A stretch of 64,000 bases of DNA from Antechinus flavipes (taxonomy: Eukaryota): assembly GCF_016432865.1 (NCBI RefSeq), contig NC_067399.1, positions 470,952,001 to 471,016,000 on the forward strand, written 5' to 3'. Made by a program: the position numbers and the translations under genes. Under the pieces are notes generated by a model. That model saw only the letters and a program-made list of their open reading frames with translations. It searched no databases and had not been told where the DNA came from. Numbering within the stretch: position 1 is the first letter of the stretch; each line of letters begins with the position of its first letter. This document shows positions 21,692 through 58,700 of the stretch, in pieces.

Positions 21692-21836
21692 NNNNNNNNN
21701 NNNNNNNNNNNNNNNNNNNNNNNNNNNNNNNNNNNNNNNNNNNNNNNNNNNNNNNNNNNNNNNNNNNNNNNNNNNNNNNNNNNNNNNNNNNNNNNNNNNN
21801 NNNNNNNNNNNNNNNNNNNNNNNNNNNNNNNNNNNN
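21692..21836. other. Assembly gap (N-run)
   Basis: Run of N. Confidence 1.
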
Positions 21837-28999: not shown

Positions 29000-29790
29000 C
29001 TTCTTCCTTTAAACACATGTTTGATGCCTTTTATTTCCGTGTTGCCATTATTTTCAACTATATCCATCCCCACTCCATCTGGCAACCAAATATTGTAACA
29101 AAGGCTAAAAAAGAAAGCAGGGGAGGAGAGTTCAGGATAACTAAAACATAACCTGAATTGAATATGCTGTTCTGTAGTTGTAGTTTCCCCTCTATTCCCT
29201 ATTTCTCTGCAAAGAACAAAGGGAAGCACATTTTCTTATCTCTTTTCTAGGGTTGAACTTGTTATCTAAATGCTAATTATCTAGCATTTAGGTTTGTAGT
29301 GTCACAGAGCTAGAACCTCAGAGACAATCTAGTCCAACCTCATTTTTTGGTTGAGACTTGGTTGAGACAAGTTAAGTAGCTTGTCCAATGTCACAGACAT
29401 AGCACATGTCAAAGATGAGATTTGAATCTAGGACTTCTAACACCTCAGGCAATGGGGGCTCTTTCCACTGTATCCTCTGGTATTTGTTGTTACACTTCTG
29501 CATATGTGCTTGTTGTCATTGTATAGATTGTTTTCCTGACTCTATTTACTATACTCAGAATCTATTTCTGTAAGTCATCCCATGCTTCTATGAATTTTTC
29601 ATATCCATTGTTTCTTGTAATATATCAATATTACATTCATATGCCACACTATGTTCAGCTATTCCCCCAAATCGTAATTATCTACTTTGTTTCCATTTCT
29701 TTGCTACCATAAAAGTTCTGTTATTAATATTTTGGATTATAGGGGACCTTTCTTTCTGTTTCATCTACATGGGATATATTCCTAATATTG
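29000..29790 (-). mobile_element. Ancient marsupial L1 3' end, interrupted by a core SINE (~29290-29480)
   Basis: Antisense L1 3'-end pattern (aatattacattcatatgccacactatgttcagctattcccc...ttgctacc); boundaries approximate. Confidence 0.6.
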
Positions 29791-30567
29791 GGATTATATT
29801 CCTACTTCTTCAGAAGAATACAATTATTTGACTGCAGCTCTTTAAATTTCCTGTCCTGGAGCAAATGTTCCCACCCCCCACTCCCACCCCTTTGCCCCCA
29901 AAGTTGTTGCCCCTTGTCCTTTTTTTGATTACAATTCTGCCTTAATGCCAGTTTGAAAGTAAAACCTGTGTCAAAGGCAAGAGACCATTATGATGAAGTA
30001 AAAAGGCTATTTATCAAGAAAAAGACCAGGCAAGGGCAGAGGCAGGAGAAATAATAGAGGTCCAGGAATATAGGTTGGCTATGTGGAAGTTTGGAGGTTC
30101 AAATGGGTAAAAAGTAGAAGCAGGGTCTGTCAGTCAAGAGTTAAGGAAAATGTATATCTAAATGTGTTTAAGCTCATAAAATAATATTTTCTGCTATGAT
30201 TGTTCATAGTGAGTCTTATCAGCAATCTTTTGAGCTCGACCTAACCTTGCCCCTCTTTATCTTATGCATGAGCTTCAGCTATGGACAGCTCCTACCCACT
30301 CCTGACTTTCCCTGCAATGGGAGAGAAGCTAACATAGTTGCAGACAGTGATATATTTACAGAATGTAAAGAAAGGTTAGAAAGAAACTTAAATCCCAAGA
30401 ACTCGAAACCATACCTGATCAAGGATCCCCCCTATAGCAGGATAGCAAGTGGTCATTCAGACTTTGACTATAGTTCTCCATTGAGGATTCTTCACTCTAT
30501 CTACTAGGGTAAGCCATTTCAGTTTTGGATAACTTTAATTATTAGAAAATGTTTTTCTTCAGTGAAA

Positions 30568-30651
30568 ATTAATGATTGCAAGCTGCAAGGATTCAGATTT
30601 ATTTTCTTCAGTGAAAATAAATCTGAATCCTTGCAGCTTGCAATCATTAAT
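30568..30651. repeat. Perfect inverted repeat: 39-bp arms, 6-nt loop
   Basis: 30568-30606 attaatgattgcaagctgcaaggattcagatttattttc is the exact reverse complement of 30613-30651; loop ttcagt. Confidence 0.98.
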
Positions 30652-32010
30652 CAATCACTATGCAAAACACTATCCTAAGTATTAGGAATGCAAAGAAGGT
30701 AAAAAGAATACCTTATAAAATAAGAAACAGTCAAAATTTATTAGAACGTGATAAAAGGGGATCACTTGTGCCTATAAAAGTGTTTGCTTTAGTAAGAAGT
30801 TTTCATTGAGACAGGAGTGAAGGAAGACATAATAAGGGAAGGCATATGAGTAAAAAAGGGGGGACAAGAAGGAGCTCTTGGCAAATTGTATCAATTTTTT
30901 TTCAGTGAAATGTGAAGCAAAATTCTCAGTTGAGAAGATGGTAGTATAGGGTGCCATGGGAAGTTTGAGGAGGAATGAAAAGATTTGGAAAAGCTGTTGC
31001 ATTGAGTGGGATGCTGAATATAAAAGGTGAGTATAAAAGGATGTGTTTATAACTTGTAAATAACTAGGTATGTACAAGATACATACAGAATAGATGGAGG
31101 GTAATCTTAGATAAGAAAACTCTGGCAGTTCAAGGGATCAGAAAAAGTCTCCTGAAGAAAATGACATTGGAGCTGATTCTTCAAAGAAGCTAGGGAAACT
31201 CAGAAATACAGAAGATAGGGAAGATCTTTCTGGGACAAGTAACAGCCAGGGCAAAAGTACAGAATTAGAATGTCACATGTGAAGCATAGTAGATAGACCA
31301 GTATAATTGGATATGTAGAGTGTGCAAAGAAAAATAAAGTATGAGAAAATTGGAAATGTGGGAAGGGCTTTGTGCCTTTGTGATTGTGAAGAACTTTAGG
31401 TGCAAAAGGCCAAATAAAAGACTTTGTGTTTGATTTTTGAGATAATAGGAAGCTTGTAGAATTTATTGAGTAATAAGGTGACATGGTCAGACATGCTTTA
31501 GGAAAATCACATTGGTAAATTGGTAGAGCATAAATTACAGTTGGGGGTGGGGATGACTTGAGATATAACTAAATATAAGAGAATAATTGCAGTAATATGA
31601 GTTGAGATGGAAATCTGAGAGATGATGAGGGTTGTATGGTTGGGGAGAAGATGAAATATGTTAGAAATGTTGTAAATGTAGAAATGACAAAATTTGACAA
31701 CTAATTGGATATGCAAAATGAATGAGATGTTGAGGCTGATGCCATAGCTGAAAGTTTTGATGCTTGGGAGGATTATGGTACCCTAAACAGTCATAGATGA
31801 ATTGGGAAGAAGGCTTTCAAAAATATTGAGTTTAGGATATCCAGTTAGAAATGGCCAAAAGAAAGTTAGTGATGCTCAGAAGAAAGATTAAGGCTGGATA
31901 AGTAAAATTGTGAATTATCTAAAAAACCAAAGATTGCACCCATGGGAACCAATGAGATAATCAAGATGGTGATCCTCTAAAGAGGAGAAACGGGGGCCAG
32001 AACAGAAAGT
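30652..32010 (-). mobile_element. L2 LINE remnants (3' end and ORF2), antisense
   Basis: Purine-rich antisense L2 pattern starting with an L2 tail (aatcaatcactatgcaaaacactatcctaagtattagg); boundaries approximate. Confidence 0.6.
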
Positions 32011-37849: not shown

Positions 37850-38118
37850 NNNNNNNNNNNNNNNNNNNNNNNNNNNNNNNNNNNNNNNNNNNNNNNNNNN
37901 NNNNNNNNNNNNNNNNNNNNNNNNNNNNNNNNNNNNNNNNNNNNNNNNNNNNNNNNNNNNNNNNNNNNNNNNNNNNNNNNNNNNNNNNNNNNNNNNNNNN
38001 NNNNNNNNNNNNNNNNNNNNNNNNNNNNNNNNNNNNNNNNNNNNNNNNNNNNNNNNNNNNNNNNNNNNNNNNNNNNNNNNNNNNNNNNNNNNNNNNNNNN
38101 NNNNNNNNNNNNNNNNNN
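37850..38118. other. Assembly gap (N-run)
   Basis: Run of N. Confidence 1.
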
Positions 38119-45048: not shown

Positions 45049-45183
45049 NNNNNNNNNNNNNNNNNNNNNNNNNNNNNNNNNNNNNNNNNNNNNNNNNNNN
45101 NNNNNNNNNNNNNNNNNNNNNNNNNNNNNNNNNNNNNNNNNNNNNNNNNNNNNNNNNNNNNNNNNNNNNNNNNNNNNNNNNNN
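45049..45183. other. Assembly gap (N-run) next to a (CT)/(GT) microsatellite
   Basis: Run of N after tgtgtgtctctg...ctctctc. Confidence 1.
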
Positions 45184-55742: not shown

Positions 55743-58700
55743 GGAAAGGCCCAGGACAGACTTAGGATGTTGCTTTAGAGCTGAAATATCATCTGCTTTA
55801 ACCTTTTCATTGATAAGAAATGAGTCCCAGATTATTTGTGATTTGACCAAGATGATACAGGTAACAAGTCACTAACCATTTAACCTTAGTTGTTCTGACT
55901 CCAAAGTCACTATCTTTCCACCACCCCACACTGCTCCATGATGACTGTTTCCAGGATTCCATAGTCATAGACTGTATAAGACCTACAAGGGAATTAAGCA
56001 ACCATCAATACTAACTCCTCATTTTAAAGATGAAGAAATTAAAATCTGTGTCTCTTGACCAAGGTCATCCTACTAGTGAGTGGCAAAAGTGGAATTCAAT
56101 CACAAGTTTCCTAACTCCAGGCTCAAGGGTCTTTCCACTCCAGCACATTGCCAGACCATCATACAGAAGAAAAATGAGACTTTTTCTGCTTCTCAGCCCT
56201 ACAGGAAACAACTAGAATTAAAAGGCATAGATTGAAAAGAGGCAGTTTTGGCTGGCTATAAGGAAACATTTCCTAATAACTAGAGCTATCCCAAAATGGA
56301 ATGGGTTAGCTTGGGAGGTAGTGGGTTCCCCTACTAAGGAAGCTTTCAAGTAGAAGCTAGATGATCACTTATATGGTATGTTATAGGAGGACTTAGTCAA
56401 ATACAGATGGGATTTGATGCCTTTGAGGTAGGTCCCTTCTAGTTCTGAAGTTCTGCACTTGGGTGTGTGTTAATAAGTGGTTTTAACTACAGGATTTCTT
56501 GGTCCTCCTATGATAATTTTGTACAAAGAAATGGGGGCTGTTGTTTCCTCTCTTTTAAAAACAACCACTTCTGTTAGTATTTCTCACTTTTTATTTAGAA
56601 TTGATTAGGTTAGTTTGTGTAAGAAACTCACCCAACCATAGCTCTGTAAGCCAGCAGCCTTCAATTCACAAATCAGAATTGGATTGTTATTGCAGGGTAA
56701 GGGAACGTTGAAAATGTCTTTTATCCTCTACTTCTGGAAAGGAAAAGAAAATGAGAGACAGAGACAGAGAAAAATAGAGACAGAAAGAGAAACAGATTAA
56801 AAAGAGACAGAGAAAAGAGAGAATGGAAAGTTTAATATGGAAATGTGGCAAAAATTTATGCTGTGCAAGTTTTTTTTCCTCTCTACACAGCAGAATTTTC
56901 CTTATTAAATAGATAACTGTGTGAGAAAAACCAAAACCAGACTATGGAGCTAAATGAGACAGGAGAGGATGTGGCAGGAACAGTCATGCGTGACTCTCAG
57001 GGCTTGTGGCAAATGCACGATGCCAGACATGGGACTTAGGGTTTGCTCTGCAAAGCCCAGGAGCTTTAGGCTGAAAAGAAATACTGTGCTCTTCTCCCAG
57101 CACACCACAGAGCAGGGCTCCCAAAGGAGGTGTTGTGCCCTGTCTGAATGAAGGCCACCTCTTCTGCCAGCCCAGAGCCACACGTTCCTCTGTCTAGGGA
57201 GCTTGTTGGAGCGGTTGCTGTGGGGACCCTCCCTGCACTTATTTCGCTGTTGATTTGGGTTTGGCAAAAGCATCCCTCTCTCTCTGTTGCCAGTCGGTCT
57301 GGGAAGGTTTTTCTTAACTGAGCTGAAGCAGGAGCTGCACATTCATTCCCTCATGCTGTTTGTTCCCATTCCTGGGTCTCCATCTCCATCTCACTTCCTG
57401 CACATGGGACTGCCACATGCAAGCTAACTGAACCAACCATGGTAGAGGATCAGAGGATCATAGGTTGTTGAATTTGAAAGGAACTTTAGAGACCATTTAG
57501 TCCCTTCTAGAGACCATTTAGTACAATTTCTTTATTTTATAGGAGATGAAAGGGAGGGAGTGTCTTGCTCAATGTCATAAGCTAATAGAAGAGCCATAAC
57601 TGAAACCCAGATTCTCTGACACTAAAGCAGTGCTCTTTCCAGCAAAGAAGAAAAAAAAAATGCTGAGAGTGACTGGGAGCTGAGAGATAAGGGTGGATGA
57701 TAAGATTGGTGGAGGAAAAATACAAGTAAGGAGTATTACTATTGATCAAACTCCAGATGGGTTTAAGAAGGACTATATAGGTAAGTTTACCTAATTAGTT
57801 TGGAAACAACCTAGTTAGGACAAAATAGGTTTCCTATGACATATTTTCATCAACTTTATCCCTTGTTATTAGGTCTATTTAGCAATTGAAAACCTTGATG
57901 GAGAAAGAGGGGTGGAACTTTGTGTCTATTGTCAAATTTTTTCAATTGGTTTTGCTGATTTTTTCCCCCTCTTTTTCTTTTTTTTCAAAAATATCTGTTA
58001 TAAGGAATGAATCTCTGAGGGAGGGATTCAAAGAAATCTTTAAGCTGTATAAATACAAAGATAACAGTAAGATTATTTTTTCAAACACCACTGCTCAAGG
58101 GGTTGTGGCTATGTGTTCATTCTTTCTTTACTAAGGATCCCCTTGGCTCTGACATGGGTTCAGTCCAGGGAGAGCCTGACCTCTAATGGAAAGGGTCGGG
58201 CTTCTTTTTACACACACTTTGACTCATTATAACCTATCCCAATAGTCTTAGGGGGAAATATTAGAGTTTAGATTAATTCTTTTTTTCAGGTCTCCTTCCA
58301 AAGAGGGAGAAGAAAGAAATTCAATACAATATAAATCGGGAAATTTTTATTTCCTACACACAAAAGAAATGCTAAACATAAACCACTCACAAATGCATGC
58401 ACCAAGAGCCTTAAAACAGGGTTCAGTCACTTGACTTACTGTTAAGGATGAGGTTGGATCTTAAATCTCATCAGTATGTGAAGTATTTTGCAGGACTACT
58501 GACTAGACATTGTTCCATTTCACCTCATTACTGTATTGTCTCCTCAAAATCTTTGTCTTCAGGTTATCCAGGCTAGGTCTTGTTCTCTTCCTCTTGCTAG
58601 GGATTATCTTTAATATTGAAATTCTCCCTATCATCAATCAGCTCTAAGAGATTCTTTTGAATTCACAAATGTAGATATGTGCATCTCAAGATCAATGTTT

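What the first reader, a model, noticed from the sequence alone, without database searches (positions are those of the whole stretch)
30553..30651. Perfect 84-nt hairpin created in one step by a replication template switch: candidate de novo pre-miRNA
Two 39-bp arms are exact reverse complements around a 6-nt loop. The 17-mer ttttcttcagtgaaaat is also directly repeated (30553-30569 and 30602-30618). One event explains both. Synthesis left the template after ...gaaaat, annealed through AT microhomology to the opposite strand at attaat, and copied ~39 nt backwards. It then returned via the small pre-existing stem ttttc/gaaaa, for a net gain of 49 bp. No mismatches means the event is recent or conserved. 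Template switching is an established route to instant hairpins and has been proposed as a source of new miRNA genes. The size fits a Drosha/Dicer substrate on either strand, and the AT-rich palindrome could also extrude as a cruciform. Expression is not shown by the sequence.
Basis: partly seen in the sequence, partly recalled or inferred. Interest (0 to 1): 0.75.

Follow-up and report, generated by a model that had tools for sequence, protein, structure and literature searches.

The report
Young DNA hairpin from copying slip
A perfect 39-bp hairpin in this marsupial's non-coding DNA is real and most likely arose in one step when DNA copying briefly switched templates, because a sister species still carries the shorter original; nothing shows that it makes a microRNA.

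Summary
Arms 30568-30606 and 30613-30651 are 39 nt and 100% complementary around a 6-nt loop. A 17-mer is repeated 49 bp apart. The structure is single-copy and not low-complexity.

It is not an assembly artefact. Contigs from a second sample of the same organism (X2) and from a close relative (X4) carry the new junction. They break at 30597 and 30622, exactly where a k=31 graph must break at a perfect inverted repeat.

A more distant relative (X7, about 1.9% diverged) has one contig crossing the site with exactly 49 bp missing and a single 17-mer. One switch-and-return event converts that allele into the window's with no residual difference. It uses 2-nt and 5-nt microhomologies, and point 4 precedes point 1, a class already described in great apes.

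The event falls on the branch shared by organisms A and C, so perfect arms need no selection. No outgroup could be laid, so a precise deletion in D (about 8%) is not excluded.

The microRNA idea is untested and unlikely: no expression evidence, a 6-nt loop, no CNNC motif, and a published base rate of about 1%. This is a clean but ordinary example.

The parts
30553..30569 (+). 17-mer, copy 1 of the direct repeat. It marks the segment that was copied twice because the return point lies upstream of the departure point.
   Evidence: family D1; the 49-bp skip in X7 fits at 17 alternative places ('both' = 17).
30570..30601 (+). 32 nt found only in the derived allele: a reverse-complement copy of 30620-30651. 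With the microhomologies on either side it forms arm 1 (30568-30606).
   Evidence: Absent from the X7 contig. Present in the left contigs of X2 and X4, which run to 30597.
30568..30606 (+). Arm 1 of the perfect inverted repeat (the copied arm).
30607..30612 (+). 6-nt loop. It was already the loop of a 5-bp mini-stem, TTTTC (30602-30606) paired with GAAAA (30613-17), in the ancestral allele.
   Evidence: the fold of the 49-bp-less allele shows the 5-bp stem with a 6-nt loop.
30602..30618 (+). 17-mer, copy 2 of the direct repeat. It overlaps the inner end of arm 1, the loop and the inner end of arm 2.
30613..30651 (+). Arm 2, the native arm that served as source for the inverted copy.
   Evidence: It is retained unchanged in the X7 allele. 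A profile of four other copies of the flanking old repeat aligns through the 17-mer into this arm: 27.8 bits, against 23.0 when the arm is flipped. This support is weak.
30402..30559 (+). Decayed copy of an old interspersed repeat in which the left flank and the start of the 17-mer lie. It is context, not part of the hairpin.
   Evidence: nhmmer against the copy at 56000-56450(-), E 1e-6. blastn 30497-30554 against 56321-56264, 78% identity. Contig depth over 30471-30604 is about 10 times single-copy in all four runs.

Best explanation
The hairpin is the product of one short-range template-switch mutation (switch-and-return) in non-coding, repeat-derived DNA. It happened on the branch shared by organism A, which by word share (0.99 and 0.93 in X1 and X2) is the window's own species, and its close relative C. 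That places it after their split from organism D.

The ancestral allele had one 17-mer followed directly by what is now arm 2. It already had a 5-bp mini-stem (TTTTC/GAAAA) with a 6-nt loop.

In one reading, the nascent minus strand frayed from its template and snapped back on itself through the 5-nt GAAAA/TTTTC pairing. It copied about 34 nt of itself, then re-annealed on the original template through a 2-nt AT microhomology 15-17 nt behind where it had left, and so copied the 17-mer twice. Both readings give the same sequence, with a net gain of 49 bp and a 39-bp perfect stem.

Shown: the two alleles, their distribution among organisms, and that one event is sufficient. Inferred: replication as the setting, which strand was nascent, and neutrality. 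The hairpin most likely does nothing. Its perfection reflects youth.
For:: X7 (organism D) has one 3,062-nt contig at single-copy depth covering 29600-30552 and 30602-30994, reported as 'skips 49' with 17 nt fitting either side. X2 (a second sample of A) and X4 (C) have left contigs that contain the new junction and end at 30597, and right contigs that start at 30622.

a k=31 simulation predicts exactly these ends for a perfect inverted repeat, and predicts no break for the shorter allele.

18 equivalent one-event solutions (3 x 6, from 2-nt and 5-nt microhomologies), with 32-39 nt copied and zero residual differences. The minimum free energy drops from -20.4/-23.5 to -80.0/-84.2 kcal/mol.

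tables 3 and 8: divergence from the window is about 0.2% for X2, 0.75% for X4 and 1.9% for X7. Four differences are shared by X4 and X7, 5 are X4-only and 17 are X7-only. This fits the tree ((A,C),D).

0.2-0.7 substitutions are expected in the 78 arm bases over that time, so perfect arms have probability 0.5-0.8 under neutrality.

Against: No outgroup beyond D could be laid. X9 gave no orthologous cover. Polarity therefore rests on parsimony and on the youth implied by perfect arms. Contigs show presence and not absence, so either allele could still segregate in any of the organisms. Sequence alone cannot separate replication-fork switching from repair synthesis at a break. The inner 8 bp of the arms and the loop were not among the contig pieces listed for X2 and X4; only the outer 31 nt of each arm are proven perfect there.
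Confidence: 0.78

Rival explanations
1. Reversed polarity. The palindrome is older than the split between A and D, and organism D lost 49 bp by slippage between the two 17-mers, perhaps helped by hairpin formation. That loss would restore the pre-switch sequence exactly.
For: A deletion between the 17-nt direct repeats gives exactly the X7 allele ('both' = 17). Perfect arms over the longer time still have a probability of about 0.48.
Against: It needs two events (an earlier template switch, then a precise reversal) where one suffices. My rough weighting of branch lengths against plausible slippage rates gives odds of 4:1 to 40:1 against it; this is inference, not a measurement. The origin of the structure would still be a template switch.
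Confidence: 0.08
2. The same sequence outcome arose during double-strand-break repair and not at a replication fork. A resected 3' end snapped back on itself, was extended by a low-fidelity polymerase (polymerase-theta-type templated insertion), and was then joined through microhomology.
For: The junction microhomologies are short, 2 nt and 5 nt. The insert is a reverse-complement copy taken from within 50 bp. By established knowledge, both features are typical of templated insertions in alternative end joining.
Against: The 17-bp flanking duplication without any deletion is not the usual scar of end joining, which normally loses sequence. [quoted passage not shown]
Confidence: 0.12
3. The hairpin is transcribed and processed into small RNAs, as a lineage-specific proto-miRNA or hairpin siRNA locus.
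For: The 39-bp stem lies within the 30-55 range and the loop is central, meeting the criteria for 'miRNA-like' template-switch hairpins in PMC10710096. The fold is very stable on both strands.
Against: No listed RNA run of organisms A or C holds the stretch. Rfam gives only hits far below gathering scores. The loop is 6 nt where 10 nt or more is preferred. There is no CNNC motif on either strand and no mismatch motif. The surroundings are L1 and retrocopy-rich AT-rich DNA with no detected host gene. The published base rate is 0.9% even within genes.
Confidence: 0.02
4. The structure is an assembly or chimeric-read artefact, or a multi-copy MITE.
For: Fold-back chimeras in long reads can create perfect palindromes. 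Perfect terminal inverted repeats are typical of MITEs.
Against: Contigs of two other samples from two studies carry the junction and break where a true inverted repeat must. The arm is single-copy in the window, and contig depth over 30605-30671 is near single-copy. The empty site lacks one arm only (49 bp) and not the whole 84-nt unit.
Confidence: 0.01

Closest known systems
[quoted passage not shown] 2021, PMC7954356)
   Same: A single switch-and-return event. It appears as one large insertion in a linear alignment. It leaves a direct repeat (here 17 nt) together with an inverted repeat, and the return requires the newly made duplex to be open.
   Different: This one is in a marsupial lineage. 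The copied fragment of 32-39 nt extends a pre-existing 5-bp mini-stem into a 39-bp perfect stem.
Template-switch-generated miRNA hairpins, for example hsa-mir-4713 and mmu-mir-3086 (Monttinen et al. 2023, PMC10710096)
   Same: [quoted passage not shown] Stem length and loop position meet their 'miRNA-like' criteria.
   Different: Those loci have small-RNA evidence, 89% are intragenic, and most have gained mismatches since. Here there is no expression evidence, no known host gene, a 6-nt loop and a still-perfect stem.
Classical quasi-palindrome correction (Ripley 1982, as summarised in PMC5453318)
   Same: The nascent strand uses itself or the opposite strand as a transient template and produces a perfect inverted repeat.
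   Different: The classical model needs a pre-existing near-perfect repeat and only corrects it. Here only 5 bp pre-existed and 49 bp were added.
Template-switch hairpin in the SWI5 intron of the same genome
   Same: According to that note, a young lineage-specific inverted copy made by a copying error in the same genome, with no evidence of function.
   Different: That one is far longer (263-bp arms) and intronic. I did not re-examine it.

Membership tests
Template-switch mutation (four-point model) | The new fragment is a reverse-complement copy of nearby sequence and long enough not to be chance (at least 14-15 nt) | tested here: met
   32-39 nt at 100% identity, with the source 0-50 bp away. 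0 chance matches in 100 shuffles.
Template-switch mutation (four-point model) | One switch-and-return event explains every difference between the ancestral and derived alleles | tested here: met
   18 equivalent solutions with zero residual differences, using the allele seen in X7.
Template-switch mutation (four-point model) | A related lineage carries the allele without the inverted copy, and descendants inherit the derived allele | tested here: met
   X7 (D) skips exactly 49 bp. X2 (A) and X4 (C) carry the junction.
Template-switch mutation (four-point model) | Direction of change fixed by an outgroup | tested here: inconclusive
   X9 gave no orthologous cover. Routes through proteins and metagenomes found nothing. 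Only weak support comes from collinearity with other copies of the flanking repeat.
Template-switch mutation (four-point model) | Not within a simple or low-complexity repeat | tested here: met
   No tandem repeat. The arms contain all four bases at 31% GC.
microRNA gene | Hairpin precursor with extensive arm complementarity and a stem of about 35 bp | tested here: met
   A 39-bp perfect stem on either strand.
microRNA gene | Reads of about 22 nt from the arms with 2-nt 3' offsets and uniform 5' ends | not tested
   Reads were laid on the DNA runs. No RNA run of A or C was offered. Contigs could not show read ends anyway.
microRNA gene | Unstructured apical loop of about 10 nt or more, plus processing motifs (CNNC, basal UG, apical UGU/GUG, mismatched GHG) | tested here: not met
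   The loop is 6 nt. No CNNC within 25 nt on either strand. No mismatch in the stem. Only a UG near the base, and a GUG at the loop edge on the + strand. The preference is as stated in PMC10710096.
microRNA gene | Match to a curated RNA family | tested here: not met
   The best Rfam hit scores 50.2 bits against a gathering score of 245. All hits are generic perfect-hairpin matches.
MITE / DNA transposon | Many copies, and the whole unit absent from the empty site, flanked by a target-site duplication | tested here: not met
   Single-copy. The empty site lacks 49 bp, that is one arm, and not the 84-nt unit.

The most novel reading that the evidence does not exclude
The hairpin, born on the branch shared by two sister species and absent from a third, is transcribed and already diced into small RNAs. 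That would make it a dated de novo small-RNA locus in a marsupial, with the pre-birth allele still alive in a relative.
Probability: 0.02. Interest if true: 0.55.

Novelty: new member of a known kind. Interest (0 to 1): 0.25.

Why it matters
This is a very clean, fully resolved example of a one-step template-switch mutation outside primates and rodents. Both alleles were recovered. The event is placed on a defined branch. Both microhomologies are visible, and a pre-existing 5-bp mini-hairpin sits exactly at the switch point. It shows that long perfect stems in neutral DNA need no selection. [quoted passage not shown] It does not open a new question. Tens of thousands of such events are known in primates, and about 1% of suitable hairpins become annotated miRNAs.

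Tried and rejected
1. Outgroup loci through proteins. The 103-aa ORF beside the hairpin has no relative in the protein collection. The 450-aa L1 ORF 2.7 kb away is not on record. No orthologous loci could be fetched this way.

2. A scan of metagenome contigs for a 24-mer from the arm found 0 matches.

3. X9 (organism F) was chosen as the distant outgroup but gave no orthologous cover of 29801-30200 or of the hairpin. Its 0.21 word share was mostly repeats.

4. Rfam gave only generic hairpin hits far below threshold.

5. MITE and assembly-artefact readings were tested and rejected.

6. Polarity from the flanking old repeat. One paralogue alone gave no significant similarity beyond the 17-mer. 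A four-copy profile gave only a 3-5 bit preference for the short allele. I recalled a repeat consensus that seemed collinear with arm 2, but did not use it because it came from memory.

7. Gene context. A Pfam scan of the ten longest ORFs found only a ZDHHC-like pseudogene, and by eye an L1 ORF2 tail. Whether the site lies in an intron remains unknown.

Full report
**Observation**

The window holds a perfect inverted repeat with arms at 30568-30606 and 30613-30651. Each arm is 39 nt, they are 100% complementary, and 6 nt lie between them. There is also a direct repeat whose first 17 nt are identical at 30553-30569 and 30602-30618, spaced 49 bp apart.
- The arm occurs nowhere else in the 64 kb, even allowing 3 mismatches, and no shuffle gives a match.
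- There is no tandem repeat.
- It is the only inverted repeat of this quality in the window that is not low-complexity.
- As RNA the region folds at -70 kcal/mol (+ strand) and -78.9 (- strand), z about -14. As DNA it folds at -46.6 kcal/mol.

**Real, not an artefact and not a mobile element**

The run search listed holders from several coded organisms with falling word shares: A 0.99 and 0.93, B and C 0.77, D 0.52, E 0.35, and F, G, H about 0.2. Earlier notes of this scan call the genome a marsupial, the yellow-footed antechinus. I did not verify that.

I laid the contigs of X2 (a second sample of A), X4 (C), X7 (D) and X9 (F) on 29600-31600.
- In X2 and X4 a long contig runs from the left through the first 17-mer and 28 nt into arm 1, and ends at 30597.
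- Another contig in each run starts at 30622.
- A k=31 simulation on the window sequence shows that the 31-mers starting at 30568-30576 and at 30613-30621 are the same canonical words. A de Bruijn assembly must therefore end its left contig at 30597 and start its right one at 30622. The 49-bp-less allele has no such collision.

The observed ends match to the base. The hairpin allele, with arms perfect over at least their outer 31 nt, therefore exists in two further samples from two studies. Depth over 30605-30671 stays near single-copy, so this is not a multi-copy element.

**The predicted ancestral allele exists**

In X7 one 3,062-nt contig at single-copy depth covers 29600-30552 and continues at 30602-30994. 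The tool reports 'skips 49' with 17 letters fitting either side.

Differences from the window in the laid contigs are about 0.2% for X2, 0.75% for X4 and 1.9% for X7. In unique sequence, 4 differences are shared by X4 and X7, 5 are X4-only and 17 are X7-only (tables 3 and 8). This fits the tree ((A,C),D).

The hairpin allele is thus shared by A and C and absent from the D contig. Contigs show presence only, so residual polymorphism in any of the three cannot be excluded.

**One event is enough**

I took the X7-type allele (window letters with 30553-30601 removed) and enumerated all single switch-and-return events. There are 18 equivalent solutions, all with zero residual differences.
- Departure (point 1) is at 30616-30618.
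- Copying starts on the complementary template (point 2) at 30649-30651.
- The copy ends (point 3) at 30613-30618.
- The return (point 4) is at 30602-30607.

The 3 x 6 ambiguity reflects a 2-nt microhomology (AT) at one junction and a 5-nt one (TTTTC/GAAAA) at the other. The copied fragment is 32-39 nt.

In every solution point 4 precedes point 1, which is why the 17-mer is duplicated. The ancestral allele already folds into a 5-bp stem with the same 6-nt loop. The event extended that stem to 39 bp and dropped the minimum free energy from about -20 to -80 kcal/mol.

Two mirror readings give the same product.
- If the plus strand was nascent, the switch was to the opposite strand, entered through AT and left through TTTTC.
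- If the minus strand was nascent, its 3' end snapped back on itself through GAAAA/TTTTC, copied itself, and re-annealed through AT.

I mildly prefer the second reading, because it puts the longer microhomology and the pre-existing mini-hairpin at the initiating step. That preference is inference.

**Context**

The left flank, 30402-30559, is a decayed copy of an old interspersed repeat. It matches a copy at 56000-56450(-) with nhmmer E 1e-6, and further copies lie near 46.8, 51.0 and 42.8 kb. This explains the roughly tenfold contig depth over 30471-30604 in all four runs.

A profile of the four other copies aligns through the 17-mer into arm 2 of the short allele at 27.8 bits. It scores 24.8 bits for the window allele and 23.0 for a control with the arm flipped. 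This is weak support that arm 2 is native and arm 1 is the copy.

The wider window is AT-rich and holds L1 pieces and retrocopies. I found no host gene, but an intronic position cannot be excluded.

**Polarity and age**

No outgroup beyond D could be examined.

A precise deletion in D between the two 17-mers would give the same picture. It needs two events instead of one. Weighting branch lengths and the chance of keeping 78 arm bases unchanged against plausible slippage rates, I put it at roughly 8%. This is an inference.

On the preferred reading, the event lies between about 0.35% and 0.95% per-lineage divergence ago. Only 0.2-0.7 substitutions are expected in the arms over that time, so perfect arms have probability 0.5-0.8 without any selection.

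**The microRNA idea**

The stem length (39 bp) and the central loop meet the 'miRNA-like' criteria of Monttinen et al. (stem 30-55, loop in the central third; PMC10710096). The same paper reports that only 0.9% of such hairpins within genes are annotated miRNAs. It also reports that 89% of template-switch miRNAs are intragenic and that a promoter is the limiting factor.

At this locus:
- The loop is 6 nt against a stated preference for 10 nt or more.
- There is no CNNC motif on either strand and no stem mismatch.
- Rfam hits are far below threshold.
- No listed RNA run of A or C holds the stretch.

Small-RNA reads could not be examined. The idea is untested and improbable, at about 2%.

**Comparison with what is known**

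The four-point model is from Loytynoja and Goldman 2017 (PMC5453318). [quoted passage not shown] Walker et al. 2021 (PMC7954356) later found many such events in great apes. They noted that these events look like one large insertion with direct and inverted repeats, and that the earlier method could not capture them.

This locus is a textbook member of that class in a marsupial.

**Verdict**

The functional claim is unsupported. This is a clean new member of a known kind and of modest interest.

Noticed in passing
window:16238-17055 (-): A ZDHHC9/14/18-like palmitoyltransferase reading frame with no introns. It is broken by stops or frameshifts after about 180 codons, and the DHHC domain (Pfam E 5e-23) continues in another frame. 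It is probably a processed pseudogene, sitting in the GC-richer block 14-18 kb.
   Followed up: partly
window:26486-27841 (-): An open 451-codon frame that reads as the C-terminal, cysteine-rich part of L1 ORF2. It has no Pfam hit and is not on record in the protein collection.
   Followed up: partly
window:30891-31140 and 30896-30916: A third, degenerate copy of the 17-mer (14 of 17) sits at the start of a high-copy repeat whose contig depth is about 100 times single-copy. One X2 contig joins 30550 directly to 30895. The 17-mer-like motif may therefore belong to a repeat family, or mark an old target-site duplication around 30619-30894.
   Followed up: partly
window:30550-30567 versus 30652-30669: Imperfect complementarity continues beyond the perfect arms (TGTTTT/AAAACA and CAGTG/CACTA), lengthening the predicted stem. 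It is present in the ancestral allele as well and may be chance.
   Followed up: no
window:29801-30470: Organism F (X9) gave no contig at 80% likeness or better over most of this unique stretch, although it holds the flanking repeats and 31223-31600. This could be a deletion, faster divergence or a filter.
   Followed up: no
window:8477-8605, 21692-21836, 37850-38118, 45049-45183: Four runs of N, 678 letters in all.
   Followed up: no
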